Shown: piece by piece, positions 3,009 to 16,960 of the stretch
Position numbering within the stretch: position 1 is the stretch's first letter
How the letters are laid out: the number at the start of each line of letters is the position of its first letter
Virus record (IMG/VR): IMGVR_UViG_3300030294_000005
Coordinates: 172,185 to 236,184 of that record
Strand: one strand, 5' to 3'
Length of the DNA stretch: 64,000 bases
The notes under the pieces: generated by a model
Told to the model about the DNA's origin: nothing
What the model saw: only the letters and a program-made list of their open reading frames with translations
Database searches by the model: none
Position numbers and translations under genes: made by a program

Positions 3009-4187
3009 ATGATGGAAGAAGATAAAGCAATATTAAAAGGTGTATATCCTATAATATCATCTAGTCTAGTAAAAAATACTACAAAATTTAAAAACTTAAT
3101 AGCTGGGTTCATAGAAAATCGTTCTAAAGATTTATTTGATACTGCTCCATGTAATAGACTACAATTTTTAAAAGATGATGTAGATAATTTTTATAAGGTA
3201 ATGAATATAACTGAAACTGATATAGAAGATGAGGTAAAGAAAACTTATTATTGGAAGATTGCTGATTTTAATCCAAGAGCTGCTAAAGATCCATTAACAG
3301 TAGCATTACTAAGTTGTGTAAGATATTTCTTTATAAAGAAAGATCAAAAGAATCTTGAATTAGCAATGATATATTTAGCTTTCTCTGGAAAGTTCTATCC
3401 AAGTATACATTCTGGATCATATCCAGTAGCTGCTCCTGAAGAAAACAGATATGTAATGGATTATGTTGTAAATGAAAAACTAACTAATAAATTTGATATA
3501 AAACGAGAGGGTAGTGTATTTGGAGCTATAAAAAGTATATGTTTAACATGGGTAGCTACTTATGATGATAGACTAAAATCATTTGATGATGAAGATATTG
3601 TATATTTAATACAACAACTTCATGGACGAATAAAATCATTTATGATAAATATTGCAGAAATATACTATGAGGTGTATAAGAATAAAGATAGTTATTTTGT
3701 ATATAATTCAGATAGTTTATCAGATGATAATTATCATATAGCAGATAATGATTCTTTAAAAATAGAAAGGCATGTTGAAAATACAATGTCTTATATATCA
3801 GGAACTGGTGTTGATTATAAGATATGTAAAATGTCATCTAATAGTAATGTAAAGACAGATGAGGTAAAAGAGATAATAGAAGCTGTCACCTCTAATAATA
3901 TAAATGTTGGAGAAGTAAAAGAATTAATTAGATTAATAATAACTCAATACTTCCTAATATCTAAAACTAAAGATGTAAGAGATGTTGATTTTATAACTAC
4001 GTCTATTGCAGCTAAACCAAATACTAAAGATAAGAATATACTAAGACAAAAACAAATAATAGAAAATTGGTTAGATAACAATTCTATAGCATATAGAAGA
4101 AGAAAATCTAGATTAGCGACTAAGAATAATTACTTTAAATCTATTCTCACTTACTTCACTATTCTTATTCACAATTCTAATAAATAG
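3009..4187 (+). CDS. hypothetical protein (same operon as virion RNAP beta fragment)
   Basis: 392-aa ORF with AGGAGG RBS; no recognised motif. Confidence 0.75.
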   Translation: MMEEDKAILKGVYPIISSSLVKNTTKFKNLIAGFIENRSKDLFDTAPCNRLQFLKDDVDNFYKVMNITETDIEDEVKKTYYWKIADFNPRAAKDPLTVALLSCVRYFFIKKDQKNLELAMIYLAFSGKFYPSIHSGSYPVAAPEENRYVMDYVVNEKLTNKFDIKREGSVFGAIKSICLTWVATYDDRLKSFDDEDIVYLIQQLHGRIKSFMINIAEIYYEVYKNKDSYFVYNSDSLSDDNYHIADNDSLKIERHVENTMSYISGTGVDYKICKMSSNSNVKTDEVKEIIEAVTSNNINVGEVKELIRLIITQYFLISKTKDVRDVDFITTSIAAKPNTKDKNILRQKQIIENWLDNNSIAYRRRKSRLATKNNYFKSILTYFTILIHNSNK

Positions 4188-4498: not shown

Positions 4499-5230
4499 AT
4501 GGAATTAACTAATAAAAAAAGACAAGATGTTGAAAGTTTGATTTATAAAGTTTTTGATGCAGTCGATACTACTAAAACAAATAGTGAGCATTATAAAGGA
4601 ATCTTTTCTAAAATGAGTAATGATGAATTTATGAAATTTTGCAAATTAAGATTCCCATTTAAGTTTCATGTAAAACCTTTTGATATACAACCAACTATGA
4701 ATGAATGTAAAAATGCTTTAGATATATTAAAAGTACCTTTATTAGAAAAGGTGAGTCTTCCATACTTATATATAAATAAAGATGGTAAAGCAGTAAGTTC
4801 ACAAGAGTGCTTAGTTGGATATATTCATCTTAAAAAAGTTAAACAATTTATAACAAAGAAGAATTCTATGTCAACAGATATAGCTCAAAGAGATATGAAA
4901 ACTGGATTATTGACTGGAAAAGATAAAAATGGAAAAACATCAGATAGAGAAATGGAATCATTAGCTGTTATGGGATTAGAGAAATCTATTGATGAATTTT
5001 CAAGATCAAGAGCAGATTCTATGAAATCTAAAAACGTAATGTATAATACTATAAATACAGTAGGGCAGGTTAGTTTAGAAGATGTTCCTGTCGATAAAGA
5101 TGATTCACTTTCTAAAAATTTATTGAATGCATATTTGATAGGTAGTCATTTAAAAAGTAATTTAATTCTTCAAGACTACTATTTAATGTATACTTTAAAA
5201 AATAAAAAGGGATCATTAGAGCGTAAATAA
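4499..5230 (+). CDS. RNA polymerase beta subunit C-terminal fragment (probably virion RNAP)
   Basis: GYIHLKKVKQ...RDMKTG...NGKTSDREMESL aligns with RpoB C-terminal GY.Y..KL.H...GGQRFGEME. A second beta C-terminus exists at 12487, so this one belongs to a second RNAP. Confidence 0.75.
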   Translation: MELTNKKRQDVESLIYKVFDAVDTTKTNSEHYKGIFSKMSNDEFMKFCKLRFPFKFHVKPFDIQPTMNECKNALDILKVPLLEKVSLPYLYINKDGKAVSSQECLVGYIHLKKVKQFITKKNSMSTDIAQRDMKTGLLTGKDKNGKTSDREMESLAVMGLEKSIDEFSRSRADSMKSKNVMYNTINTVGQVSLEDVPVDKDDSLSKNLLNAYLIGSHLKSNLILQDYYLMYTLKNKKGSLERK

Positions 5231-5240
5231 AGATATTTAT

Positions 5241-5253
5241 AATTATATATTAT
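5241..5253 (+). promoter_or_regulatory. Putative early promoter AATTATATATTAT
   Basis: Exact motif; an AACA-N6-TA motif follows at 5306-5317. Confidence 0.6.
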
Positions 5254-5345
5254 ATAAATGATTATATATATTATATAAGCAATTATATAAATATACTATA
5301 TATATAACAATGAAATAAATAGTTTAATGAGGAGGTTGATACGAA

Positions 5346-5486
5346 ATGAACAAAACCGATGACAAACTTGGTTTTATTACTGAGGTTGGTGACCTAGGGC
5401 TTGGGTTCGATGAACTATCAAGCGAGGATAAAGACAAACTAAAAAAGATTAATACCGACAAAGAAGATAGTAAAGAGGATAAATAA
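5346..5486 (+). CDS. small acidic protein (46 aa; not in ORF track)
   Basis: GAGGAGG RBS; MNKTDDKLGFITEVGDLGLGFDELSSEDK...; AACA-N6-TA promoter at 5306-5317. Confidence 0.6.
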   Translation: MNKTDDKLGFITEVGDLGLGFDELSSEDKDKLKKINTDKEDSKEDK

Positions 5487-5522: not shown

Positions 5523-6281
5523 ATGAGAAAATTTGTAAAAATATATTTATTAACATTGGTAGTGTTCATTACTGTTATAAGCATAGTAGTATTACATTAC
5601 GAAACTAAGGTAACAGCAATAAACACGAGCAACAAAATTTATGTAGAAAAATTAAATTCTACTCATAAAGAAGAAATTTTAAAATACGAAACATATGAAT
5701 ATTTATATAATGATAACATGACACAACTAGCTCAAGAGCAAGTAAAATATAAAGAGCTTAAAGCAGATTATGATTCTTTTAAAAGTAATGTAGCATTTAC
5801 TAAACTTAGCCAGACATATTCGAGAGGCGGAGCAGATGATGATTTAACTAAATTTAGTCCAATAACAACAGATGAACTCAATGCGTGGATAAAAGCTAAA
5901 GCTCCAGCAAATTCACCATTTATAGGAAAAGGAGATTCATTTATATTGGCTTCAAAAGATACAGGATTAGATCCTAAATATATAGTAGCCCATGCAGCAT
6001 TAGAATCAGGATGGGGGACTTCTAGTTTAGCAAAAAGTAAAAATAACTTCTATGGAATAGGAGCGTTTAATTCGTCTCCAAATTCAGCATATAACTTTGA
6101 TACAGTACGAGATGGAATAGTATCTGGTGCTAAATGGATTTATGATAACTACATCAGTGAAGGGCAAAATACATTAGAGAAAATGATTTATGGACATAAA
6201 GCCTATTGTGTGACAAACGCAGGCGTTCCAGATTCGGAATGGATTACTAAAGTGGGAAGTATCATGGTACGAGATTATTAA
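5523..6281 (+). CDS. Secreted/membrane-anchored peptidoglycan hydrolase (GH73 glucosaminidase)
   Basis: N-terminal hydrophobic signal/anchor, coiled coil, SRGG linker, AALESGWGTS and NNFYGIGA GH73 motifs. Confidence 0.85.
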   Translation: MRKFVKIYLLTLVVFITVISIVVLHYETKVTAINTSNKIYVEKLNSTHKEEILKYETYEYLYNDNMTQLAQEQVKYKELKADYDSFKSNVAFTKLSQTYSRGGADDDLTKFSPITTDELNAWIKAKAPANSPFIGKGDSFILASKDTGLDPKYIVAHAALESGWGTSSLAKSKNNFYGIGAFNSSPNSAYNFDTVRDGIVSGAKWIYDNYISEGQNTLEKMIYGHKAYCVTNAGVPDSEWITKVGSIMVRDY

Positions 6282-6369: not shown

Positions 6370-7572
6370 TTGCGTACACGTATAATAGGATTAGGTGCTG
6401 CTGGAAATAAAGCTGCAATAGCAGTTATAGAAAAAAGCATACTCAGTAAAGAGGAAGTATTATTATTCAATAGTACCATCAAGGATGTACCCGACGCTTG
6501 GAGAAGTATAGCAATACAATTTACAAATGTTAGTAGAGGCGGATGTGGTAAAGAACGACAAGCTGGAAAAGATTTATGTTTAGAATTTCTAGGTTCCGAA
6601 AGGGTCAAGCAATTGGATTCGTTTATTCAAGATGGTGAAGATAATCTAATAATAATAGTATCCTCTTCTGAGGGCGGCACTGGTTCTGGTTCTTCTGCAA
6701 TTATGGCTCAATATATCAAAGATGTTCTAGGTGCAAATGTTATGCCATTTGTATTTGATGGATTTGAGGAAGATAGCAGAGGATTACAAAATACAATAGA
6801 ATACTTTAAAGATATGCAGGATAAATATATTATTCAGGCAATATCCAATAAGAAATTCTTAGATGGTCCAAATAAATTTAAAGCTGAGAAAGCAGCTAAT
6901 GATGAATTTGCAAGACGTGTTTCAATAATAAATGGTAGTATGCTAATTGATTCAGATCAGAATATTGATGAAACTGATTTGTATAAAGTAGTAACAACTG
7001 CTGGATTTATGACTGTAGGATATACTGAGTTAAATAAAATAAAGAATATAGCTCAGTTTAATACAGTATTAACAGAATGTATTGATAATGATAAATCATT
7101 AGACATATCAACTAAATCTGCAAAAAGAATTGCAGTAATAATCAATGCAAAAGAAGAAACAAAAGATTCAATAGATTTTTCATTTAGTGTATTAAAAGAA
7201 AAATTTGGTAGCCCATATGAAATATTTACTCATGCTCAGTTTGATGAAAGTCAACCAGAATATGTAGCATTCATAGTTTCTGGATTGGAACTACCGATTG
7301 ATGATGTACAAGAAGTTTATGAAAAATATAAAAAAGAATCTGAAAAAGTTTCAAAAAGAAAAGATGGTTTCTTTGAAGCTGCATCTAAATTAAAAGGAAA
7401 TGAAATTGATGCAATGTTTAATTTAGAAGTTCCATCAAAAGAAGTTACTACAGATAGATCTAAATTTCTAAATACATTCAAGAAAAATATAAAAACTGAA
7501 ACTGTTCCTAACAAGGAAATTGATGCTAGTATAACTGATGTAAAAAATAATCAGTTTATTACTAAATACTAA
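6370..7572 (+). CDS. Tubulin/FtsZ-family GTPase (PhuZ/TubZ-like)
   Basis: IGLGAAGNK glycine loop, GGCGK, GGTGSG tubulin signature, NIDETD T7-like loop, flexible C-terminal tail; TTG start with GGAGAGG RBS. Confidence 0.9.
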   Translation: MRTRIIGLGAAGNKAAIAVIEKSILSKEEVLLFNSTIKDVPDAWRSIAIQFTNVSRGGCGKERQAGKDLCLEFLGSERVKQLDSFIQDGEDNLIIIVSSSEGGTGSGSSAIMAQYIKDVLGANVMPFVFDGFEEDSRGLQNTIEYFKDMQDKYIIQAISNKKFLDGPNKFKAEKAANDEFARRVSIINGSMLIDSDQNIDETDLYKVVTTAGFMTVGYTELNKIKNIAQFNTVLTECIDNDKSLDISTKSAKRIAVIINAKEETKDSIDFSFSVLKEKFGSPYEIFTHAQFDESQPEYVAFIVSGLELPIDDVQEVYEKYKKESEKVSKRKDGFFEAASKLKGNEIDAMFNLEVPSKEVTTDRSKFLNTFKKNIKTETVPNKEIDASITDVKNNQFITKY

Positions 7573-7589
7573 AAATTGGAGGTGTTATC

Positions 7590-8483
7590 TTGTTAGATAG
7601 TTTTATGAATGATTTAGAAAATAAGAAAACAGAAACTACATTAGTAGATATAAATATAATGGATACACCGATATTTAATATACAAGTACTATATGATAAG
7701 TTATCTAATATAGATAAAGTGTCAGATAAAGAATTGTATTCTTTATTAAAGATAGGATATAAAGATTTACTAAAAGATATCTTTAATAAAGATACACCAT
7801 TATATTTAACATTGTTAACAAATTCAAAATTTATTACAATATTTATACAGGTCTTGAGTTCAGAAATTCTTGACTATGATTGTAAAGTATATTGTAATAA
7901 GATAGCATATGATTATCTTACATTGTCAGAAAATAAAGATAAGTACATTCAACAGTTGTACTACACTTTATCTAAAGTTGTTAATCGAGGAATAATTCCT
8001 GGGCTATTGGGCCTTGGGATACAAGAAGATTTAGCATCTTATATAGCATTGGCAAGGTACTCATCATTAAAAGAAATGATAAATGTAGAAAGAGTTAATT
8101 TCATAATCATCTCTTCTTCCAAAGAACATGTTATGGCAGAACAGATGATAGTATGGATATATGAAAAATTATTTGATAGAGTTACTCCTTTATTTGAAGG
8201 AGTTATGTTCGATATTCTTACGGAGGATGATGAAGATAATTATACTGATAACATGCTAGAGACGTATTCTACGATCTCTCTAGCTGTATTAGATATAATG
8301 AATAATCTTCCATCCCAGGATATCAGGAAAGTCCTGATATCCTATGTAGGAGACTACGAACTAGTTTATAGAAAGCCAAATCAAAAAACAACAAGATTTT
8401 CTATGGACTCTTTATCAACTGATTATTCAAGAATAAATCAAGCAATAGAAGATTTAAAACTAGAAACAATCTATGTTCCTTAG
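7590..8483 (+). CDS. hypothetical helical protein co-transcribed with tubulin
   Basis: GGAGGTG RBS with TTG start, 17 nt after the tubulin stop; terminator at about 8496-8519. Confidence 0.7.
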   Translation: MLDSFMNDLENKKTETTLVDINIMDTPIFNIQVLYDKLSNIDKVSDKELYSLLKIGYKDLLKDIFNKDTPLYLTLLTNSKFITIFIQVLSSEILDYDCKVYCNKIAYDYLTLSENKDKYIQQLYYTLSKVVNRGIIPGLLGLGIQEDLASYIALARYSSLKEMINVERVNFIIISSSKEHVMAEQMIVWIYEKLFDRVTPLFEGVMFDILTEDDEDNYTDNMLETYSTISLAVLDIMNNLPSQDIRKVLISYVGDYELVYRKPNQKTTRFSMDSLSTDYSRINQAIEDLKLETIYVP

Positions 8484-8495
8484 GGATGAATTTAG

Positions 8496-8519
8496 TATAA
8501 GAGGCTGCAGCCTCTTATA
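8496..8519 (+). terminator. Intrinsic terminator closing the tubulin operon
   Basis: tataagaggctgcagcctcttata followed by a T tract. Confidence 0.75.
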
Positions 8520-8558
8520 TTTTTTTATATTAAAATTATAAATAGGAGATGTATTAAT

Positions 8559-8948
8559 ATGATTGAAAAGAAAATAATAAGAGTAGGAAAACCAACAAAA
8601 CTATCAGAACCTAATTTAAATGGAATATTATATGAACCAATATCTTTAAAGAATGCAATAAATACTTTTTTAAAAAATGAAGATCATATACCTAATGTTG
8701 TAGTTTTAGATTCTAGCTATGATTCTTTTAAAGATAATGAATATTATACTATAGACTTAAATAAAACATTAGGATATTGTATTGATATTGCTGATGATTA
8801 TATAGAAATACTAATAGATGATTACTATTCTTTTATTAGTAAATTTAAAAATCCAATAGCAATGCTTAGATTAGTAGGCGAGAGAGGTAATAATGTCGGC
8901 GAATTTAATGTTAAAAAAATAATAGCTATAGATATAAGGGAGAAATAA
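8559..8948 (+). CDS. hypothetical protein
   Basis: AGGAG RBS; 129-aa ORF. Confidence 0.65.
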   Translation: MIEKKIIRVGKPTKLSEPNLNGILYEPISLKNAINTFLKNEDHIPNVVVLDSSYDSFKDNEYYTIDLNKTLGYCIDIADDYIEILIDDYYSFISKFKNPIAMLRLVGERGNNVGEFNVKKIIAIDIREK

Positions 8949-8950
8949 AT

Positions 8951-9214
8951 ATGAAAATGAAAAATATATTTAAAACATTAAGTGGCAGACCTAAAAATGG
9001 AAATATAACAGAAACTATTAGACCTCTTATATTTTATCCACAATTACTATTCTGTATAATAACAATGTTCTTAGGATTCAGTAGCACATATCCAATAGAA
9101 AAACTTATGTTTTCTGTTGGTTCAATTGCTTTAGCTTGGCAATTAGGCTGGGGTATGAGTATAGAAAGATTTATAAAATCTGAAAAAAATAAAGATGACC
9201 TAACATCTAAATAG
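8951..9214 (+). CDS. small membrane protein (2 predicted TM segments)
   Basis: Hydrophobic stretches PLIFYPQLLFCIITMFLGF and LMFSVGSIALAWQLGWGM. Confidence 0.6.
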   Translation: MKMKNIFKTLSGRPKNGNITETIRPLIFYPQLLFCIITMFLGFSSTYPIEKLMFSVGSIALAWQLGWGMSIERFIKSEKNKDDLTSK

Positions 9215-9216
9215 AG

Positions 9217-9471
9217 GTGATAAATATGATGTTATGGGAAGAAGAAATTATTAAAAAAATAAGAGATAATGTATATTCAAAAGCTATAATACAATCTAGA
9301 ATTGGTACTGTAGTTAATATAACATCAATGCTTATATATAATCGTTATGTGTTTGAAAAAAAAGCAACAATATCTAAAATATTTTATCATATATTATCAG
9401 ATATAATGCATGATAAAAAATATAGGGGGAGTTTGAGTTTAAATGAAACTATTATACAACGGAATACATAG
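9217..9471 (+). CDS. hypothetical protein
   Basis: GAGGTG RBS (probable ATG at 9226). Confidence 0.55.
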   Translation: MINMMLWEEEIIKKIRDNVYSKAIIQSRIGTVVNITSMLIYNRYVFEKKATISKIFYHILSDIMHDKKYRGSLSLNETIIQRNT

Positions 9472-9772
9472 AAGAGTTGGATTTATAGTCCAACATTCTG
9501 GTGGATATAATCGTGAATATCATATAACTAAAATGTCTGAAAGATTAGATATAGATAGAGATACATTAGCTATGCTTTTTAAAGAAGCTTCAAAAAGTAA
9601 CATATTACAATATATTGATTTATTAGAAACAGGAGTTCCTATAGAGAAAGTATTTAGTATGGTAGATAATGATAATAGAATAGCACATGAAAGAATGATA
9701 AGATTTATGGCTTATACTTCAAAATATTTTACAGCATTTAATTATCTAGATAAAGGTAGGGGATATCTATGA
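9443..9772 (+). CDS. hypothetical protein
   Basis: GGGGAG RBS; overlaps its neighbours. Confidence 0.6.
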   Translation: MKLLYNGIHRRVGFIVQHSGGYNREYHITKMSERLDIDRDTLAMLFKEASKSNILQYIDLLETGVPIEKVFSMVDNDNRIAHERMIRFMAYTSKYFTAFNYLDKGRGYL

Positions 9773-9879
9773 TTATAGGATTGATGATAACTGGAGTTTT
9801 CTTATTTTTAATATTAGATGCTTCAGAAAAGTCAGGTAAAGCATATTTAGAATATCTTAAAAATAATCCAGATGAGTAA
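9769..9879 (+). CDS. small membrane peptide (36 aa; not in ORF track)
   Basis: ATGA coupling with the upstream stop; MIIGLMITGVFLFLILD... hydrophobic N-terminus. Confidence 0.5.
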   Translation: MIIGLMITGVFLFLILDASEKSGKAYLEYLKNNPDE

Positions 9880-9891
9880 GGAGAATTAATT

Positions 9892-10158
9892 ATGAAAGAG
9901 GATATTAAAGAATTATTAATAGAGAATGAAGAATTACGTAAATTATATAATATTGATGTTATTTTCAAAAAATGTATTGATGTTGCAGATAAAACTAATA
10001 TGAATATTAAAGAAGCTTTAATCTTTACTTTAATTAAAGTATTTGAAGTTAAGAAAATATTATATGATAATATGATTAAGATTACTTTAGAATCTAATTT
10101 AAAATTTAAATTAGATAAGGATGCTAAATTTGTAAAATTAGAAGAGGAGAGTAAATAG
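9892..10158 (+). CDS. hypothetical protein
   Basis: AAGGAG RBS. Confidence 0.6.
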   Translation: MKEDIKELLIENEELRKLYNIDVIFKKCIDVADKTNMNIKEALIFTLIKVFEVKKILYDNMIKITLESNLKFKLDKDAKFVKLEEESK

Positions 10159-10746
10159 ATGAAGATAGATTATGCTACTATAATGATTATATTAACCATT
10201 ATTCTAGTTCCTATAATAGTTCCTACATTAATTTTATGGTTAACCCATATAACTATGACCAAAGATTATTCTGAGAAATGGGCTTGGGGTAGTTTTAAGT
10301 CATTTAAAATTCAATTTGAAAAAAGTAATATGAAAAAAAATGAGTATCCTTTAGGAGGATACTCTAGCGGATTTGATTGTAAATGTGAATTTAATTTAGG
10401 TATTATAAAATTTAATTATATAGGAATGTTACTCAATCCTATAGATTATATTAGAGCTGCATTGTATATCAAATCATTACCTAAAACTATACCTGATACT
10501 TTTGATTGGGAAGAATTTAAAAAGGTATATTATATTATACTTATTAAAGATCATGAGCATCCTAAATATATACAGGTTTTAGATAATGGATATTTAATAA
10601 CACCAGAGATTTGTGATTCTACAAGATATACTTATAAGTATGATGCCGAAAAAGAATTAGATATAGTATCAGAAATATTTAAAAATAGAACATTTGAAAT
10701 AATGGATATAGATGGATATCTTAGTAGAGTGGATAGTTCGATATAA
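10159..10746 (+). CDS. hypothetical membrane-anchored protein
   Basis: N-terminal TM segment; terminator at about 10745-10768. Confidence 0.6.
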   Translation: MKIDYATIMIILTIILVPIIVPTLILWLTHITMTKDYSEKWAWGSFKSFKIQFEKSNMKKNEYPLGGYSSGFDCKCEFNLGIIKFNYIGMLLNPIDYIRAALYIKSLPKTIPDTFDWEEFKKVYYIILIKDHEHPKYIQVLDNGYLITPEICDSTRYTYKYDAEKELDIVSEIFKNRTFEIMDIDGYLSRVDSSI

Positions 10747-10787
10747 AATGGGTTATTCAACCCATTTTTATTTTTTATTATAATGAT

Positions 10788-10799
10788 AACTATTAAATA
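10788..10799 (+). promoter_or_regulatory. AACT-N6-TA promoter variant upstream of the RecA operon
   Basis: AACTattaaaTA between terminator and RBS. Confidence 0.5.
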
Positions 10800-10825
10800 A
10801 CCAATATATTTAGGAGGGATATAAT

Positions 10826-11131
10826 ATGAGTAATAATTCAGATCTTGAAACAGTTACTATGGAATTAATAGAATCTGACAAACTTACAAAAAATAGTAAT
10901 GTCTATCCAGCTTCAATTTTAGATAATAATAAAGAACTTCATTCTATAATAACACCTGTTATTACAAAACATAATATAGAAAAGTTATTTATACTAAATA
11001 AAGATTCTGTTAAAGATATTGAAGATATTAAAAATATCTTAGACTTTATTATTAAAACATTAAATATACGATCAGGTGATGGAACTACATTATATGGTTT
11101 AAGTGAAATAATACAATATTTAAAACAATAA
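10826..11131 (+). CDS. hypothetical protein
   Basis: AGGAGG RBS. Confidence 0.6.
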   Translation: MSNNSDLETVTMELIESDKLTKNSNVYPASILDNNKELHSIITPVITKHNIEKLFILNKDSVKDIEDIKNILDFIIKTLNIRSGDGTTLYGLSEIIQYLKQ

Positions 11132-11145
11132 AGGAGGAAATATAT

Positions 11146-12396
11146 ATGCCATCATTATTAGCAGAGAATTTTAGAACGGCAGTTTCTAAACTCAAAGATT
11201 ATCGTATGAAAGTTGAAACAGAACATTCTGTAGGATATTCTACAGGATTTTTAAGTTTTGATTTTACTAATGGTACAGTTGTTCATGTAAACTCAAAGGA
11301 AAAGAAATTCGATTATTATTCTATAGGAATTACAGATGGGTCTATGGTAATGGTAATAGGAAGAGCTGGTTGCGGTAAAACTACATGGGTAGTACAAGCG
11401 GCTGCAAATATTATAAGAGCTTTCAAAACATCATGCATATTTCATGATGATATTGAAGGTGGTATAAATGATTCAAGAACTGAATTACTTACAAAATTTC
11501 ATGGAGATGAATTAAAAGATAAATATATTCATAGGAATACTGGTATAACAGCAGAAAACTTCTATGAAAGAATAAAGATAGTTCATGATATGAAAATTAA
11601 TAATAGATCTGATTATGAATATGATACAGGTCTTTATGATAGTTCAGGAAATAGAATATTTAAACTAGATCCTACAGTATATATATTAGATTCTTTAGCA
11701 TTATTAATGCCAGAGCAGTATACAACTGAGGACGAATTATCTGGACAGATGTCTGCTACATCAACAGCTAGAGCCAATGCTAGTATCTTTAAGAGAATAG
11801 TTCCAATGCTAAAATCTGCAAATATAATTTTATTTGTAATTAATCATATAAATCAAAAGATTGAGATAAGTGCATTCTCTAGAACTAAATCTCAAGTTAG
11901 TTATTTAAAACAGGGTGAAACACTTCCAGGAGGAAATGCTCCAATCTATTTAGCTAATAATATGATAAGAGTAGATGATCATAGTAAGTTAAAAGAATCA
12001 GAAGGTTTTGGTATTGCTGGAACATTAGTAGACTTTACTTTAGTTAAATCAAGAACTAATAGAGCTGGTAGTGTTGCTACCTTAGTATTTGATCAAGAAA
12101 ATGGTTACGATGAAGAGTTATCATTATTCTTCCTATTAAAAGAAGCAGGTAAGATTAATGGTGCAGGAGTTGGTTTATACTTAGGAGATAGAAATGATGT
12201 TAAGTTCTCACAGAAGAGCTTTAAAGATAAGATAGCCAAACATGATGATATAAAACAATTATTTATGGAAGAAGTAATAGTAGTATTAAAAGGAATATTA
12301 GAAAGTCAAGGATCTAATAATAGTGAAACAGAAACCCGTTCTGATTTAGAATTGACCGATACTATTCTAAATATGATAAATGAAGAAGCAGCTTAA
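11146..12396 (+). CDS. RecA/UvsX-like recombinase
   Basis: STGFLSFD N-terminal motif, Walker A GRAGCGKTT, DIEGG, Walker B ILDSLALL, FVINHI, LPGGNA, VKSR. Confidence 0.9.
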   Translation: MPSLLAENFRTAVSKLKDYRMKVETEHSVGYSTGFLSFDFTNGTVVHVNSKEKKFDYYSIGITDGSMVMVIGRAGCGKTTWVVQAAANIIRAFKTSCIFHDDIEGGINDSRTELLTKFHGDELKDKYIHRNTGITAENFYERIKIVHDMKINNRSDYEYDTGLYDSSGNRIFKLDPTVYILDSLALLMPEQYTTEDELSGQMSATSTARANASIFKRIVPMLKSANIILFVINHINQKIEISAFSRTKSQVSYLKQGETLPGGNAPIYLANNMIRVDDHSKLKESEGFGIAGTLVDFTLVKSRTNRAGSVATLVFDQENGYDEELSLFFLLKEAGKINGAGVGLYLGDRNDVKFSQKSFKDKIAKHDDIKQLFMEEVIVVLKGILESQGSNNSETETRSDLELTDTILNMINEEAA

Positions 12397-12486: not shown

Positions 12487-14670
12487 ATGGCAGATCCAAG
12501 TTTAATTAATAACGTTTTAGAAGCAGGAAAAAGATTAACATCAAAAGAACAAATGTTAGGTAAAGGATTGAATATGCCTTTTAACGCTCTAAATTCAGGA
12601 GCAAGAAAAATAATGTTTTCTACACAGATGGATCATCGTGTAGATTTGTTTAACCCAGAAGCCCCATTAATAAGCACGGGGTATGAAAATAGATTTGGTG
12701 AATATACATCTTCTTTTATCAAATCTGATAGTAGATATATGGTAATTGCTAAGATAGAAAAATTCTCTCATCTTCCAGGGCATCATTATTATTTAGTGTT
12801 AAAGAAGTTTGATAGTGATGAATATGAAATTATTGAGAGAGTAATGTATGAGCATGTTACTGAAGCTTACGGATATCTATATAATACAAAATATATGGAT
12901 CATCTAAAGATTGGAAGTATAGTAGAAACTAATGATGTTATACGAAAAAGCACATCATATGATGAATATGATAATAGAATGGATGGGGTTAATTTAATAA
13001 CAACATATCTATCTAATGAAGATACAAAAGAAGATGGAATTGTAGTAGCAAGGTCTGTAACTGAAAAGTTAGCATGTCCATTAATTAAGACTATCCAAAT
13101 AATAATCAATGATAATGATATACCACTTAATATGTATGGCGATGATAATATATATAAAATAATGCCAGATATAGGAGAGAGCATAAAGAAGGGTATATTG
13201 TGTGCTATGAGAAGAGAGAAAAAAGAAGAATCATTATTTAATCAATCTCTTCAACATCTTCAATCATTAATGATGTCAGATGATAAGTTTATAGCAAAAG
13301 GACAAATTATAGATATAGATGTATACTGTAATAATCCTGAGATATTAAAAGAATCATACTATGCTACACAAATAAAATATTATAGTGATAATAGTTTTAG
13401 ATTTATGAATGATATTGTAAATGTTATTAAACCTATAATAGAAGATAATGTTAATAAGTGTAGTTATGAATTACAGAAAATATATTATGATTGTAAGAAG
13501 ATAGTAGTAGATGGGAAGAAGTATATAAAAGATAAACCATTCTCTAATACTATAATAAATATAACTATATTAGAGAAGAGTGTATTAGCAGTAGGAGATA
13601 AGATATCTAATAGATATGGTGGTAAAGGAGTAGTTTCTAAGATAAGAGAAGATGATCTAATGCCATTATTAAAAGATACAGGTGAGAGGGTTGAAGTAAT
13701 ATTTAATTCAGCAACATGTATAAATAGAGAAAATATAGGTCAATTATTTGAGACATCGCTAAACGATATATCTAATAAATTACTTCATTATATGGAGAAT
13801 GTATTAGATACAGATGAATGTAATGAGATGTATAGAGATTTGGTTTATTTAACTAATAGGGAACAAGGCGAGAAGGTAGATGAATTATTATCTAGATTAT
13901 CTCCTGAAGAACAGCATTATTTCTTTGACTCTGTAATATCAGATAGTGGCATAATGCTTAGTATGAAACCTATAAGTGATCCAATGAATATTGATATGCT
14001 GTCTGCAATATATGATAAATTTCCTTATATAAAACAGCATAAGGTAACAGTGCCACAAAGGGATTCTAATGGTAATGTAAGATATCTAGAAACTAGAAGA
14101 AGATTGACTTGTGGAAAACAATATATCTATAGATTAAAACAATATGCTGAAGAAAAGTTTAGTGCGACTTCACTTTCTTCAACAAATATAAGAAATGAAA
14201 ATAGTAGAAGCTCTGCTAAAAAATCTTATAAAACAATATTTACAAAAACTCCAATAAGATTTGGAGAAATGGAATCTGGAAACTTATTACATCTTGGTGC
14301 AGAAAATGTAGTTATTAACTTATTACTATATTCCGCATCTCCTAAAGGAAGAAGACTTGCTGAAGAATTATTAATTGGTAATCCGTTTGATATAAATGTT
14401 AAATTGGACGACCAATCTACAAATAGAGGTGTTGAAATTCTTAATGCATATTTATTAACAATGGGATTAAGAATAGAATTTGTAAAAACACAAAAAACTA
14501 AAAAAGCACCTATTAAGTTTACACCTATTATAGTTCCAGCAAATAGAACTCCAATACGATTTGTTAATCCAGATGATAAGATGATTAAAGAGTATCTAGA
14601 TAATTTTGGTAAGAAATCAAAATCACCTATTAAATTTGTTCCAATATCATTTGTAGGAAGGACTGATTAA
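12487..14670 (+). CDS. Non-virion RNA polymerase beta subunit, C-terminal half
   Basis: NSGARKIMFSTQ, EDGIVV, GDKISNRYGGKGVVS, RENIGQLFE, YIYRLKQ, PIRFGEME. Confidence 0.92.
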   Translation: MADPSLINNVLEAGKRLTSKEQMLGKGLNMPFNALNSGARKIMFSTQMDHRVDLFNPEAPLISTGYENRFGEYTSSFIKSDSRYMVIAKIEKFSHLPGHHYYLVLKKFDSDEYEIIERVMYEHVTEAYGYLYNTKYMDHLKIGSIVETNDVIRKSTSYDEYDNRMDGVNLITTYLSNEDTKEDGIVVARSVTEKLACPLIKTIQIIINDNDIPLNMYGDDNIYKIMPDIGESIKKGILCAMRREKKEESLFNQSLQHLQSLMMSDDKFIAKGQIIDIDVYCNNPEILKESYYATQIKYYSDNSFRFMNDIVNVIKPIIEDNVNKCSYELQKIYYDCKKIVVDGKKYIKDKPFSNTIINITILEKSVLAVGDKISNRYGGKGVVSKIREDDLMPLLKDTGERVEVIFNSATCINRENIGQLFETSLNDISNKLLHYMENVLDTDECNEMYRDLVYLTNREQGEKVDELLSRLSPEEQHYFFDSVISDSGIMLSMKPISDPMNIDMLSAIYDKFPYIKQHKVTVPQRDSNGNVRYLETRRRLTCGKQYIYRLKQYAEEKFSATSLSSTNIRNENSRSSAKKSYKTIFTKTPIRFGEMESGNLLHLGAENVVINLLLYSASPKGRRLAEELLIGNPFDINVKLDDQSTNRGVEILNAYLLTMGLRIEFVKTQKTKKAPIKFTPIIVPANRTPIRFVNPDDKMIKEYLDNFGKKSKSPIKFVPISFVGRTD

Positions 14671-14671
14671 A

Positions 14672-16960
14672 ATGAATGACATAATAAGGAAAGTTTTAGA
14701 TGAAGTAAGACAAGGGAATAAAACTTTTCTTACTGATTTAGAAACTATGAGTAAGATAAACTCATATGTAGAAATGGTAATAAAATCAAATACACATTCC
14801 AATGATGATATAGAAAATATGAAAGGTATGTTAGAGATTTCTAACATACTTTTTAATAACACAGATAGAGATTTTATATTATTAGAGGATGGGGTATATG
14901 ATTTATTAATTGAAAAATGTAAAAAATATGATCCAAATTATTTAGTAGGAGCAAAACCTGTTTATTTTGCTCCTACAAATAATGACTCATTGACTAAACT
15001 AAAATCAAAAGTTATAAGATTTGTTGATCAAGATAAGATAGATGATATGTTATATGGAAATGATATATTCAAATATGAAGAAATAAAAAGAACTGATATA
15101 TTGAAGAGTCCAATAACATTTAAGAATACTGATGTGATAGCTAAGAGAGTAGTAAATACAAAACATAACTATCCAAAATTAGTAGGGACTTTAGATAAGG
15201 GTAAATTTGTATTAAGTTCTCAAGCAAAAGAAAAAGGTGTATATGATGATAATAATGTAAAAATATTAGAAAGGGATTTCTTTAAGAAACATATAGATGA
15301 TGGAATCTTAGATCCAAATAGAAAGTTCTATATAGTTGCAGAATTAAAATATGATGGAATTTCTGTTGAAGGAGATGTTACAAATCAGATAGAAGGAGGA
15401 AGAACTAGAGGAGATACAAATGAAGATATTGCAGCTGACCTAACTCCTATATTAAGAGGTTATAGATTTAGATATGCTCCAATGATAGATGAAGCTTTTG
15501 GGATGAAATTTGAAGCTATAATGACTCATAATAATTTAGCAAAATATAATGTAATCAAACAGAAAGATTATAAGAATTGTAGAACTGCTATCTCTGGATT
15601 ATTTGCATCGTCTGATGCTCCACAGTTTAGAGACTTTATAACATTAGTACCTTTAGCAACTTCTATAGAAGACATTGATAGACTTTCTGAAATAGAATTT
15701 ATGAATAAGTATTACAATTCTGGAGAAAGATTAAGATATTCAGTATTGTATGGTAACTATGTAGATATACTATTTCAGATAAAGAAATTTGTAGAAGAGG
15801 CAGAATATCTTAGACCATATATGCCTTTCATGTATGATGGAGTAGTGATATCTTATATAGAACCAGATCTCATAGATAAACTTGGAAGAGTAAATTCTGT
15901 TAATAAATATTCAATGGCAGTAAAATTTAATCCACTTAAGAAACAAGCAATATTTATAGAATACAGATATACCGTAGGCCAAGATGGTGTAATAACTCCT
16001 ATGATTTATTATACTGCAGTAGAGTTTTATGGCACAACACACAATCATTCTTCTGGTCATTCATATGAAAGATTTAGAACTTTGGCTTTAAGAAAAGGTG
16101 ATATAATAGATGTAGAATATGTGAATGATGTTATGCCATATGTATCAAAACCAGATAATTCACATAATCTAGAAAATACAAATCCAGTTGAAGTATTTCC
16201 TACAAAATGTCCTTCATGCGGAATAGTGCTAGAAATATCTGAATCAGGTAAATCTGCATTATGTTCTAATATGGCATGTAAGCAAAGAAATATAGCTAGA
16301 ATAGTGAGTATGTTAAAGAAATTAAATGTTAAAGATTTCTCAGATGCTTATTTGTTACAGATAGGTAAATATACATTATCGGATATGATGAATCTATCTG
16401 TAGATGAAATACAATTCTTAGGAGAGATTACTTCACAAAAGTTTATAGAAAGAATGAATCAATTAAAATTACAACCTATATATGATTATAAGATTATAGG
16501 AAGTCTTGGATTTACAGATATAGGTGTTAGAAAATGGAAGTTAATATTAAATAAATATACATTAGATGAGATACTATCTTTTACAGAAGAGCAACTAAGA
16601 GATGCTTTATTAAATATAAAAGGTATAGGTCCAGCTACTGTAGATACTATAGTATCAGAATTTAAATTCTTTAAGGCAGATATAGATACTATACTTAAGA
16701 TGCCTAATATACTAAAGTCTAAAGGAGTTAAGTCGGGTAAGTCTATAAGATTTACTGGATTTAGAAATGAAGAATTAGTAAATACTTTAAATGATATGGG
16801 ATATGATGCAAATGGAGATAGTGGTGTTACAAAATCAACAGATATATTATTAGTTCCATTTGAAGGTTACACTAGTCCTAAGACAGTTAAAGCATCAGCT
16901 AATAATATTATGATAATTCCTATAAATGATTTTACTAATAATATGGATAAGTATTTATAA
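14672..16960 (+). CDS. ligA: NAD-dependent DNA ligase
   Basis: ELKYDG adenylation motif, TRGD, DGVV, AVKF, VGQDGVITP, Cys4 Zn finger, HhH KGIGPA, BRCT-like IRFTG. Confidence 0.93.
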   Translation: MNDIIRKVLDEVRQGNKTFLTDLETMSKINSYVEMVIKSNTHSNDDIENMKGMLEISNILFNNTDRDFILLEDGVYDLLIEKCKKYDPNYLVGAKPVYFAPTNNDSLTKLKSKVIRFVDQDKIDDMLYGNDIFKYEEIKRTDILKSPITFKNTDVIAKRVVNTKHNYPKLVGTLDKGKFVLSSQAKEKGVYDDNNVKILERDFFKKHIDDGILDPNRKFYIVAELKYDGISVEGDVTNQIEGGRTRGDTNEDIAADLTPILRGYRFRYAPMIDEAFGMKFEAIMTHNNLAKYNVIKQKDYKNCRTAISGLFASSDAPQFRDFITLVPLATSIEDIDRLSEIEFMNKYYNSGERLRYSVLYGNYVDILFQIKKFVEEAEYLRPYMPFMYDGVVISYIEPDLIDKLGRVNSVNKYSMAVKFNPLKKQAIFIEYRYTVGQDGVITPMIYYTAVEFYGTTHNHSSGHSYERFRTLALRKGDIIDVEYVNDVMPYVSKPDNSHNLENTNPVEVFPTKCPSCGIVLEISESGKSALCSNMACKQRNIARIVSMLKKLNVKDFSDAYLLQIGKYTLSDMMNLSVDEIQFLGEITSQKFIERMNQLKLQPIYDYKIIGSLGFTDIGVRKWKLILNKYTLDEILSFTEEQLRDALLNIKGIGPATVDTIVSEFKFFKADIDTILKMPNILKSKGVKSGKSIRFTGFRNEELVNTLNDMGYDANGDSGVTKSTDILLVPFEGYTSPKTVKASANNIMIIPINDFTNNMDKYL

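What the first reader, a model, noticed from the sequence alone, without database searches (positions are those of the whole stretch)
6370..8519. Tubulin/FtsZ-like protein plus a dedicated partner gene in an AR9-like Firmicute jumbo phage
A two-gene unit (tubulin plus a 297-aa helical unknown, both with TTG starts, closed by a terminator). Phage tubulins act as spindles for the phage nucleus (PhuZ) or as partition motors (TubZ of Clostridium phage c-st). Finding one together with AR9-type transcription and a shared docking motif suggests organised intracellular replication; the partner could be an adaptor (inference).
Basis: partly seen in the sequence, partly recalled or inferred. Interest (0 to 1): 0.6.

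Follow-up and report, generated by a model that had tools for sequence, protein, structure and literature searches.

The report
Orphan tubulin of nucleus-less jumbo phages
A 236-kb virus of bacteria from peat carries a filament-protein gene of the tubulin/FtsZ kind from a branch not described before; it occurs only in uncultured distant relatives of Bacillus phage AR9, which lack the known 'phage nucleus' shell protein, and the neighbouring gene is a frequent but not obligatory companion with no recognisable fold.

Summary
ORFs 6370-7572 (400 aa) and 7590-8483 (297 aa) both start at TTG behind good ribosome-binding sites. A strong hairpin with a T-run at 8494-8526 closes the pair.

The first protein is a real tubulin/FtsZ-superfamily GTPase, with the GGTGSG signature, an NxDxxD T7 loop and a confident model. 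It belongs to no named family. By sequence profile it lies nearest FtsZ and CetZ; by fold it lies nearest Clostridium phage c-st TubZ. It is far from PhuZ. It is absent from GenBank phages and plasmids, and among species-representative genomes it turns up only on nine MAG contigs.

The phage is a distant AR9/PBS1 relative, with 33% identity in the nvRNAP beta subunit and AR9-type early and late promoter motifs. It has no chimallin, so a nucleus-spindle role is not supported. No TubR or centromere repeats are present, so it is not a TubZRC partition cassette.

The 297-aa protein is acidic and all-helical, and matches no known fold. It follows the tubulin gene in most relatives. However, each gene has been lost at least three times while the other was kept, so they are not an obligate pair.

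The unit probably starts at an early promoter at 5244/5265 and also includes a 46-aa micro-ORF and a membrane-anchored glucosaminidase. The function remains inferred.

The parts
5244..5285 (+). Tandem pair of AR9-type early (virion RNAP) promoter motifs, TATATATTAT-N6-G. The predicted transcription starts are near 5260 and 5281.
   Evidence: The core motif occurs 49 times in the genome. About 33 copies lie between genes and point toward the downstream ORF. It has the same architecture as the AR9 early consensus AAATATATATTAT-(6N)-G (PMC5312081). In at least 20 relatives the motif sits about 1050-1250 nt upstream of the tubulin gene. Promoter function is inferred, not shown.
5306..5317 (+). Match to the AR9-type late promoter motif AACA-N6-TA.
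   Evidence: The motif is enriched genome-wide in upstream regions, 79 observed against 27.7 expected, and only at 6-nt spacing. This single site is weak evidence, because about 10% of upstream regions match by chance. Sequence read.
5346..5486 (+). 46-aa acidic micro-ORF with a GDLGLGF motif, the first gene after the promoter.
   Evidence: AGGAGG lies upstream. Micro-ORFs of 45-48 aa with the same motif occupy the same position in distant relatives L003, L005 and L007.
5523..6281 (+). Membrane-anchored peptidoglycan hydrolase (glucosaminidase domain, N-terminal transmembrane segment at residues 7-25).
   Evidence: Pfam PF01832 at E 1.2e-16 and phrog_10341 (endolysin) at 4e-48. Hydropathy over a 19-residue window reaches 2.65. 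Relatives carry a peptidoglycan hydrolase of varying type at this position.
6370..7572 (+). Tubulin/FtsZ-superfamily GTPase, 400 aa. It comprises a core with an H11-like helix (residues 1-330), then a tail with the conserved motifs DxFF (332-335), DxMF (347-350) and KxxFFxxF (362-370), and a variable end.
   Evidence: PF00091 at E 2e-6, 28.5 bits, below the gathering cut-off of 33. AlphaFold2 mean pLDDT 85, with nearly all of residues 1-320 above 90. VIA Z 34.4 to c-st TubZ, 32.0 to Bt TubZ, 31.1 to CetZ2 and at most 29.3 to FtsZ. G102, G103 and G105 (T4 signature) and N198 and D200 (T7 loop) are invariant; T104, G107 and D203 are kept in at least 90% of members.
7590..8483 (+). 297-aa acidic (pI 4.6) all-alpha protein of unknown fold, the usual downstream neighbour of the tubulin gene.
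   Evidence: AlphaFold2 pLDDT 90, 16 helices. No Pfam, PHROG, NCBIfam or PDB sequence match. No convincing PDB fold match: Foldseek TM about 0.2 and VIA Z at most 5.8. Only weak resemblance to HEAT/ARM solenoids, TM at most 0.51. It lies directly downstream of the tubulin gene in about 50 of 64 IMG/VR loci.
8494..8526 (+). Intrinsic terminator that closes the unit.
   Evidence: 12-bp stem (4 G-C pairs), 4-nt loop and a T-run. z = -3.9 against shuffles.

Best explanation
ORF 6370-7572 encodes a catalytically intact filament-forming GTPase of the tubulin/FtsZ superfamily. It belongs to a separate, phage-specific clade that occurs only in uncultured, chimallin-less jumbo phages encoding multisubunit RNA polymerases and distantly related to AR9/PBS1. 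Their hosts are probably Bacillota.

The gene is transcribed from AR9-type early promoter(s) at 5244/5265, possibly with a late one at 5306. The same unit carries a 46-aa micro-ORF, a membrane-anchored glucosaminidase and the 297-aa helical protein, and it ends at the terminator at 8494-8526.

The most likely mechanism is inferred. Early in infection the protein polymerises with GTP into cytoplasmic filaments. Its conserved aromatic motifs on a flexible C-terminal tail dock cargo, neighbouring subunits or host factors. The filaments thereby organise phage DNA or the replication and assembly zone without a proteinaceous nucleus.

The 297-aa protein is a co-transcribed accessory, possibly a modulator or adaptor, but it is not an obligate partner.

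Shown here: gene reality, fold, motif conservation, synteny, absence of chimallin, TubR and iterons, and the pattern of independent losses. Inferred: polymerisation, timing of expression, cargo, and any tubulin-partner contact.
For: Fold and motifs: pLDDT 85; VIA Z 34.4 over 290 residues at rmsd 2.2 to c-st TubZ. The GGTGSG signature glycines and N198/D200 of the NxDxxD T7 loop are invariant across 73 members, and D203 is kept in at least 90%. The T7 loop aligns to the FtsZ T7 loop.

Separate clade: the FtsZ equivalog scores 37 bits against a cut-off of 295. The family profile against PDB sequences gives FtsZ 49.9 bits, CetZ1 39 and c-st TubZ 35, and finds no PhuZ, Bt TubZ or eukaryotic tubulin. 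The family is monophyletic against four reference proteins.

Phage-specific: no tblastn hit in 50,697 GenBank phages or 72,556 plasmids. Among the species genomes scanned, only 9 MAG contigs carry it. There are 64 IMG/VR loci on contigs of up to 342 kb.

AR9-like and without a nucleus: and the literature (PMC10299810, PMC7598289, PMC13282480).

Operon: no internal + strand terminator. The gaps between tubulin and partner are mostly 4-30 nt, and in some relatives the genes overlap.
Against: There is no experimental or transcript evidence; none of the public runs holding the stretch is on record as RNA. The Pfam score is below the gathering threshold. Related phages at 90-99% estimated completeness have lost the tubulin, so its role is dispensable. 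The complex prediction gave no answer. Early timing rests only on analogy with AR9 promoter motifs. The cargo is unknown.
Confidence: 0.6

Rival explanations
1. The 297-aa protein is not functionally tied to the tubulin. It is a conserved early protein of this phage clade, perhaps working with the adjacent peptidoglycan hydrolase or on its own, and the tubulin gene merely sits between the two.
For: Ten of 24 partner loci have no tubulin nearby. Five whole records, three of them at least 90% complete, have no match to the family profile or to PF00091. In those phages the partner directly follows a peptidoglycan hydrolase of the LysM+3D, SLT or glucosaminidase type. The tubulin-less state appears in at least 3 places on the partner tree. 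Five tubulin-bearing records scored 99-100% complete lack the partner. Complex prediction scored 0.00, which is no verdict.
Against: In about 50 of 64 tubulin loci the partner lies immediately downstream on the same strand, with gaps of 4-30 nt or overlapping. That arrangement is typical of co-translated, interacting products. Independent loss does not exclude a modulatory interaction.
Confidence: 0.4
2. The protein manipulates the host divisome or cell envelope. It has a core, a flexible linker and a short conserved C-terminal peptide, an architecture like FtsZ. Through this peptide it would engage host proteins that bind the FtsZ tail (FtsA/SepF type) or disturb the Z-ring. Together with the membrane-anchored glucosaminidase it would block division or remodel the wall early in infection.
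For: The nearest sequence profiles are FtsZ. The tail has a disordered stretch at 342-359 followed by a conserved helix at 363-375 of the form K/D-x-F-F/L-x-x-F followed by basic residues. The gene is co-transcribed with a peptidoglycan hydrolase, and a hydrolase of varying type is kept at that position.
Against: Identity to FtsZ is only 17-21% and there is no canonical P-x-F-L-R motif. An H11 helix (310-326) is present, as in TubZ and CetZ but unlike FtsZ. The glucosaminidase may simply be the endolysin; AR9 has its putative holin and a membrane protein at the corresponding place. This is pure inference.
Confidence: 0.15
3. It is a TubZ-type (type III) segregation motor that partitions the phage genome during a carrier or pseudolysogenic state, with the 297-aa protein as the adaptor.
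For: The closest fold is c-st TubZ (Z 34.4). The family profile finds c-st TubZ at 36 bits. PBS1/AR9-type phages are known for pseudolysogeny (general knowledge; PMC7824862 discusses tubulins in pseudolysogeny).
Against: No TubR-like winged-helix gene is adjacent. The only repeat near the unit is the duplicated promoter; there are no iterons. The partner is acidic, pI 4.6 with a family median of 4.95, and shows no similarity to TubY. The motifs suggest early lytic-cycle expression.
Confidence: 0.1
4. It is a PhuZ-like spindle that centres a phage nucleus.
For: It is a jumbo phage with multisubunit RNA polymerases, a group in which tubulin and a nucleus often occur together (PMC7824862).
Against: phrog_4795 (chimallin) gives no match at E<=1 in this genome, scored 95% complete, or in 4 relatives. 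The phiKZ control scores 769 bits. The PhuZ profile scores only 20.6 bits against 395 for phiKZ PhuZ. PhuZ is not among the top 50 structural matches. The literature states that AR9-, PBS1- and PALS_2-type phages lack chimallin (PMC10299810).
Confidence: 0.03

Closest known systems
TubZ of Clostridium botulinum phage c-st (PDB 3V3T/4XCQ; TubZRC plus TubY system)
   Same: It is the best structural match: Z 34.4, rmsd 2.2 over 290 residues, including the H11 helix. It is the only phage tubulin the family profile detects, at 35-36 bits. Both are phage-encoded, both come from low-GC Firmicute settings, and both have a gene immediately downstream.
   Different: Identity is only 17-18%. There is no upstream TubR and no tubC repeats. 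The downstream gene is unrelated to TubY (hhalign probability 0.1%). The context is a lytic-type early operon in a 236-kb phage with multisubunit RNA polymerases, not a plasmid-prophage partition locus.
Bacterial and archaeal FtsZ, and archaeal CetZ
   Same: These are the best sequence-profile matches: T. maritima FtsZ 49.9 bits, M. jannaschii FtsZ 42, CetZ1 39. The T1, T4 and T7 loops are conserved. The protein has a core, a linker and a short conserved C-terminal peptide. CetZ is the top Foldseek hit.
   Different: The FtsZ equivalog scores 37 bits against a cut-off of 295. Identity is 17-21%. An H11 helix is present, which FtsZ lacks. The gene is phage-borne and absent from isolate genomes.
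PhuZ of chimalliviruses (phiKZ gp39, 201phi2-1 gp59)
   Same: Both are tubulin-superfamily proteins of jumbo phages that encode virion and non-virion multisubunit RNA polymerases, and both are expected to be expressed early.
   Different: There is no meaningful sequence relation: the family HMM scores phiKZ PhuZ at 7 bits, and phrog_4733 scores 20.6 bits here. There is no chimallin. The tail motifs are different.
Bacillus phage AR9 / PBS1 (Takahashivirus)
   Same: It is the nearest cultured relative by nvRNAP beta subunit, at 33% identity. The early and late promoter architectures are the same. The UvsX-like, nvRNAP beta C-terminal and NAD-ligase genes are in the same order.
   Different: AR9 has neither the tubulin nor the partner; both profiles are null at E<=1 over the whole record.

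Membership tests
Tubulin/FtsZ superfamily | N-terminal nucleotide-binding domain with the T1 glycine loop and the T4 signature GGGTG(S/T)G | tested here: met
   GLGAAGNK at residues 7-14 and GGTGSG at 102-107. G9, G12, G102, G103 and G105 are invariant in 73 sequences. PF00091 scores E 2e-6 but only 28.5 bits against the gathering cut-off of 33.
Tubulin/FtsZ superfamily | Two-domain fold joined by helix H7, with a T7 synergy loop (NxDxxD/E) that completes the neighbouring subunit's GTPase site | tested here: met
   The model has pLDDT 85. All 718 aligned tubulin, FtsZ and TubZ chains score Z>=8, and the top score is 34.4. N198 and D200 are invariant and D203 is kept in at least 90% of members. 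The loop aligns to the FtsZ T7 loop.
Tubulin/FtsZ superfamily | GTP-dependent polymerisation into protofilaments | not testable with these tools
   This needs a biochemical or imaging assay.
FtsZ (cell-division orthologue, TIGR00065) | Score above the equivalog cut-off | tested here: not met
   37 bits against a cut-off of 295.2.
FtsZ (cell-division orthologue, TIGR00065) | Chromosomal gene of a cellular genome | tested here: not met
   The gene lies on a 236-kb virus record. In the genome collection (one genome for each of 185,579 species) only 9 MAG contigs carry it, and no isolate genome does.
FtsZ (cell-division orthologue, TIGR00065) | Conserved C-terminal peptide (D-I/L-P-x-F-L-R/K) after a disordered linker | tested here: inconclusive
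   A linker (342-359) and a conserved K/D-x-F-F/L-x-x-F helix (363-375) are present, but without the Pro and with different spacing.
TubZRC type III partition system | TubZ-like fold with the C-terminal H11 helix | tested here: met
   Z 34.4 to c-st TubZ and 32.0 to Bt TubZ. The alignments run through residues 327-334.
TubZRC type III partition system | Adjacent TubR winged-helix centromere-binding protein | tested here: not met
   The upstream neighbour is a glucosaminidase. The downstream neighbour is a 297-aa acidic helical protein with no DNA-binding domain match.
TubZRC type III partition system | tubC centromere made of tandem iterons next to the operon | tested here: not met
   The only nearby direct repeat is the 21-nt promoter duplication at 5244/5265.
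PhuZ (chimallivirus spindle tubulin, phrog_4733) | Sequence membership in the PhuZ family | tested here: not met
   No PHROG hit at E<=0.01 by hmmscan. The family scores 20.6 bits in the genome search, against 395 bits for phiKZ PhuZ.
PhuZ (chimallivirus spindle tubulin, phrog_4733) | Co-occurrence with chimallin (the nuclear shell protein) | tested here: not met
   phrog_4795 is absent at E<=1 from this genome and 4 relatives. The positive control in phiKZ scores 769 bits. A non-homologous shell cannot be excluded.
AR9/PBS1-like jumbo phages with multisubunit RNA polymerases | Split multisubunit RNA polymerase genes closest to those of AR9/PBS1 | tested here: met
   The 727-aa Rpb2_6 protein is 33% identical to AR9 g089 over 93% of its length. 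ORF 4499-5230 matches phrog_3233, an RNAP beta subunit piece.
AR9/PBS1-like jumbo phages with multisubunit RNA polymerases | AR9-type early (A/T-rich 13-mer, N6, G) and late (AACA-N6-TA/G) promoter motifs | tested here: met
   These are motif statistics only; no transcript data exist.
AR9/PBS1-like jumbo phages with multisubunit RNA polymerases | Uracil-containing DNA | not tested
   I did not look for Ugi or dUTP-pathway genes, and base composition cannot reveal it.

The most novel reading that the evidence does not exclude
A phage cytoskeleton that works without a nucleus. An FtsZ/TubZ-intermediate filament is made early by AR9-like jumbo phages. Its FtsZ-style C-terminal peptide would recruit host divisome adaptors, or the acidic alpha-solenoid neighbour. 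Together with the co-transcribed membrane-anchored peptidoglycan hydrolase it would reshape the host envelope or position replication and assembly sites. This would be a third, mechanistically distinct use of tubulin by phages, beside PhuZ spindles and TubZ partition.
Probability: 0.1. Interest if true: 0.8.

Novelty: new variant of a known kind. Interest (0 to 1): 0.55.

Why it matters
Two uses of tubulin by phages are known: PhuZ, which centres the chimallin nucleus, and TubZ, which partitions plasmid-like prophages. Reviews state that the AR9/PBS1-type phages, which have multisubunit RNA polymerases, form no nucleus, and the cultured ones have no tubulin.

This finding shows a large, conserved tubulin clade of its own: about a thousand 90%-identity clusters, on contigs of 150-340 kb from peat, gut and other habitats. 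It sits in exactly that nucleus-less lineage and probably belongs to the early genes. This separates 'jumbo phage tubulin' from 'phage nucleus'. It also offers an intermediate between FtsZ, CetZ and TubZ for studying how tubulin-family filaments diversified.

The repeated independent loss of either gene is a useful caution against reading adjacency as partnership.

Tried and rejected
- Complex prediction of tubulin plus partner (full length, own alignments) scored 0.00 in both runs, and the controls were not run. This is no verdict and is not evidence either way.
- The partner has no sequence match in Pfam, PHROGs, NCBIfam or PDB, as a single sequence or as a profile.
- Fold searches for the partner gave only noise-level helical-repeat matches: Foldseek PDB TM about 0.2, VIA-wide Z at most 5.8, below the helical noise level, and ESM Atlas TM at most 0.51. 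TOG-domain rows at Z 4.7-5.2 were rejected as chance.
- BFVD returned three uncharacterised 'Myoviridae sp.' proteins, at 24% identity and TM 0.76-0.79.
- The atlas feature search stayed below 0.9.
- The profile search of 1.84 billion representatives found 512 stand-alone homologues and no informative domain fusion.
- The idea that the tail motif DxMF(D/N) is the partner's docking site was rejected as untestable here. The motif is missing in the 9-member partner-less clade but persists in the other partner-less lineages, L005 and L049.
- tblastn of both proteins against GenBank phages, and of the tubulin against plasmids, found nothing.
- No public run holding the stretch is on record as RNA.
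- The tree against named families used only four references, on very long branches. It shows that the family is monophyletic but not which family is its sister. More named FtsZ, CetZ and TubZ sequences could not be fetched economically.
Full report
OBSERVATION. The window is the last 64 kb of a 236,184-bp IMG/VR virus record that CheckV scores as 95% complete. It has 26% G+C. The stretch is held by metagenomes from more than fifteen peat samples.

Both ORFs are as described. The first, 6370-7572, encodes 400 aa and starts at TTG, 8 nt after GGGAGAGG. The second, 7590-8483, encodes 297 aa and starts at TTG, 7 nt after GGAGGTG. The TTG starts are credible for two reasons. Only five codons are open upstream of the first. 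Both N-termini align with position 1 of their homologues.

A 12-bp hairpin followed by a T-run at 8494-8526 closes the pair. Its z-score is -3.9, and none of 200 shuffles folds as well.

THE FIRST PROTEIN IS A TUBULIN/FtsZ-SUPERFAMILY GTPase FROM A CLADE OF ITS OWN. Pfam Tubulin (PF00091) matches at E 2e-6 but below its gathering score, 28.5 bits against 33. The FtsZ equivalog TIGR00065 scores 37 bits against a cut-off of 295. PHROGs gives nothing at E<=0.01.

The AlphaFold2 model, built on 73 homologues, is confident, with mean pLDDT 85 and above 90 across nearly all of residues 1-320. Every tubulin, FtsZ or TubZ chain compared scores Z>=8. The ranking is:
- Clostridium phage c-st TubZ: 34.4 (rmsd 2.2 over 290 residues)
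- B. thuringiensis TubZ: 32.0
- CetZ2: 31.1
- FtsZ: at most 29.3
- PhuZ: not among the top 50

Foldseek alone puts CetZ first. A profile of the family against PDB sequences gives the opposite order: FtsZ 49.9 bits, archaeal FtsZ 42, CetZ1 39 and c-st TubZ 35. It finds no PhuZ, Bt TubZ or eukaryotic tubulin at E<=10.

The alignments to TubZ and CetZ run through the H11 helix (residues 310-326). Those to FtsZ stop at about residue 307. The protein therefore combines FtsZ-like sequence signatures with a TubZ/CetZ-like C-terminal helix.

The catalytic apparatus is conserved. In GGTGSG (102-107), G102, G103 and G105 are invariant, and T104 and G107 are kept in at least 90% of 73 members. In the T7 loop, N198 and D200 are invariant and D203 is kept in at least 90%. 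The loop aligns to the T7 loop of FtsZ.

After the core comes a tail with conserved aromatic motifs: DxFF at 332-335, DxMF at 347-350 and K/D-x-F-F-x-x-F at 362-370. The last motif is modelled as a helix with pLDDT about 83 after a disordered stretch. The end of the tail is variable.

DISTRIBUTION. The word search returned 994 homologues at 45-71% identity, all about 400 aa long, on contigs of up to 309 kb. IMG/VR holds 64 loci on contigs of 146-342 kb. There is no tblastn hit at E<=1e-3 in 50,697 GenBank phage records or in 72,556 plasmids. In the genome collection (one genome for each of 185,579 species) only nine MAG contigs carry it. They are binned as Solobacterium, Phascolarctobacterium, Acidaminococcales, Bacilli, Tenericutes and Spirochaetaceae. 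This is weak evidence for Bacillota hosts. On a tree with E. coli FtsZ, phiKZ PhuZ, c-st TubZ and pBtoxis TubZ the family is monophyletic. The references sit on very long branches, so no sister group can be named.

THE PHAGE IS A DISTANT AR9/PBS1 RELATIVE WITHOUT A NUCLEUS SHELL. The 727-aa RNAP beta C-terminal subunit (12487-14670) is closest to AR9/PBS1, at 33% identity, and then to Staphylococcus jumbo phages at 32%. The gene order of UvsX-like ATPase, nvRNAP beta and NAD ligase matches AR9 g086-g089-g095.

The motif AATTATATATTAT-N6-G-AATAAA occurs about 33 times between genes, oriented toward the gene downstream. It has the architecture of the AR9 early virion-RNAP promoter (PMC5312081). 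The AR9 late motif AACA-N6-T[AG] is found in 79 upstream regions against 28 expected, and only at a spacing of 6.

Chimallin (phrog_4795) is not detected at E<=1 in this genome or in four relatives, all scored 93-100% complete, while phiKZ scores 769 bits as the positive control. This agrees with published statements that PBS1-, PALS_2- and phiR1-37-type phages lack chimallin (PMC10299810, PMC7598289, PMC13282480). AR9 itself has neither the tubulin nor the partner.

TRANSCRIPTION UNIT. A tandem pair of early motifs lies at 5244 and 5265, and a late-type match at 5306-5317. Downstream follow:
- a conserved 46-aa micro-ORF at 5346-5486
- a weak hairpin
- a glucosaminidase with an N-terminal transmembrane segment at 5523-6281
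- the tubulin gene
- the 297-aa gene
- the only + strand terminator in the region

In at least twenty relatives the early motif sits about 1050-1250 nt upstream of the tubulin gene, in front of the hydrolase gene. Several relatives have an extra copy 28-69 nt upstream of the tubulin gene itself. Early expression is therefore likely, but it is inferred from motifs alone.

THE 297-aa PROTEIN. The model is confident (pLDDT 90) and consists of 16 helices. The protein is acidic, with pI 4.6 and a family median of 4.95, and has no transmembrane segment. No family, PDB sequence or convincing fold match was found. There is only a weak resemblance to HEAT/ARM solenoids, at TM at most 0.51. BFVD returned three uncharacterised 'Myoviridae sp.' proteins. 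The family has 512 clusters at 50% identity. The 150 best hits listed are all stand-alone proteins of 167-364 aa. It is unrelated to c-st TubY.

ARE THEY PARTNERS? In favour: the gene lies directly downstream of the tubulin gene, on the same strand, in about 50 of 64 IMG/VR loci. The gaps are mostly 4-30 nt, and in some cases the genes overlap.

Against:
- A nine-member clade has tubulins of 429-439 aa with a basic C-terminal extension and lacks the partner, as do L049 and L005. Five of these records, scored 99-100% complete, have no partner match anywhere. On the tubulin tree the partner-less state is nested and needs at least 3 changes. L068 keeps a very remote homologue.
- Conversely, 10 of 24 partner loci have no tubulin nearby. 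Five whole records, three of them at least 90% complete, have no match to the family profile or to PF00091. On the partner tree this state also needs at least 3 changes.
- In the tubulin-less phages the partner directly follows a peptidoglycan hydrolase of varying type: LysM+3D, SLT or glucosaminidase.

Each gene therefore persists without the other. They are not an obligate two-component system, although a modulatory interaction is not excluded. The complex prediction gave no verdict.

MECHANISM. The following are shown: a conserved, catalytically intact tubulin-family GTPase; a phage-specific clade; the AR9-like genomic setting; co-transcription signals; and the absence of chimallin, TubR and iterons. 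The rest is inferred. GTP-dependent filaments form early in infection and organise phage DNA or the replication and assembly zone without a protein shell, and the conserved tail motifs serve as docking sites.

There are four rivals:
- The neighbour is functionally independent of the tubulin.
- The protein is an FtsZ-style decoy or anchor that uses its C-terminal peptide on host divisome proteins, perhaps together with the hydrolase.
- It is a TubZ-type partition motor for a carrier state.
- It is a PhuZ-like spindle for a phage nucleus. The chimallin result makes this unlikely.

NOVELTY. I found no paper describing this clade. The kind, a phage tubulin, is known. This branch, its occurrence in the nucleus-less AR9-like lineage and its gene neighbourhood are new. 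I rate it a new variant of a known kind, with interest 0.55.

Noticed in passing
whole genome G000; in the window e.g. 5244, 5265, 17581, 25251, 25934, 61565 (+) and 43509, 55377, 56000, 57778 (-): The intergenic motif AATTATATATTAT-N6-G-AATAAA is strongly over-represented. The core occurs 49 times, about 33 of them between genes, 36-112 nt upstream of ORF starts and in the sense orientation. It has the same architecture as the AR9 virion-RNAP early promoter.
   Followed up: partly
whole genome G000, the 100 nt upstream of ORFs: The AR9 late-promoter motif AACA-N6-T[AG] occurs in 79 of 278 upstream regions against 27.7 expected from shuffles. At spacings of 5 or 7 it occurs no more often than expected (24 and 11). 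This suggests the non-virion RNAP has AR9-like specificity.
   Followed up: partly
window 5346-5486 (+); L003:3100-3240, L005:3483-3629, L007:3965-4102: A conserved 45-48-aa acidic micro-ORF with the core motif GDLG(L/I)(G/N)(F/Y) is the first gene after the early promoter. It lies between the RNAP-beta-piece gene and the hydrolase gene in distant relatives. Its function is unknown.
   Followed up: partly
L095:1836-2723, L101:2802-3776, L104:2271-3089, L106:1239-2417, L110:3228-3956, L114:2676-3566; window 5523-6281: The position in front of the tubulin and partner genes is always held by a peptidoglycan hydrolase or binder, but the catalytic type varies: glucosaminidase, LysM+3D or SLT. This looks like non-orthologous displacement at a fixed slot. 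In this window the enzyme has an N-terminal membrane anchor and appears to be in an early unit.
   Followed up: partly
L060-L071 (tubulin ORFs, e.g. L064:7980-9275): The partner-less nine-member clade, from complete 212-225-kb genomes with direct terminal repeats, has a longer tubulin of 429-439 aa. Its tail lacks the DxMF(D/N) motif and ends in a basic extension, RRSKRRR...GGYEKKKGFTAKK, reminiscent of the basic tails of TubZ.
   Followed up: no
window 11146-12396, 12487-14670, 14672-16960 (+): A block of a RecA/UvsX-like P-loop protein (416 aa), the nvRNAP beta C-terminal subunit (727 aa) and a likely NAD-dependent DNA ligase (762 aa) follows. It has the same order as AR9 g086-g089-g095 and is conserved in all relatives inspected. 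The ligase identity is inferred from relatives' Pfam tags, not tested on the window ORF.
   Followed up: partly
window 8559-11131 (+): Seven small ORFs of 84-195 aa lie between the partner gene and the UvsX-like gene. Only the first (8559-8948) was scanned, and it has no family match. Most relatives have fewer genes here, so this stretch is a variable insert.
   Followed up: no
L002 / L092 (IMGVR_UViG_3300029923_000022, 58 kb): A second IMG/VR contig is 100% identical over the partner gene and the 3' half of the tubulin gene, and it begins in the middle of the tubulin gene. The same phage was assembled from another sample. The stretch is held by more than 15 peat metagenome runs.
   Followed up: no
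window 3009-4187 and 4499-5230 (+): The 392-aa protein matches phrog_2921 (unknown function). The 243-aa protein matches phrog_3233 (RNA polymerase beta subunit piece). Both keep their position upstream of the unit in relatives.
   Followed up: no
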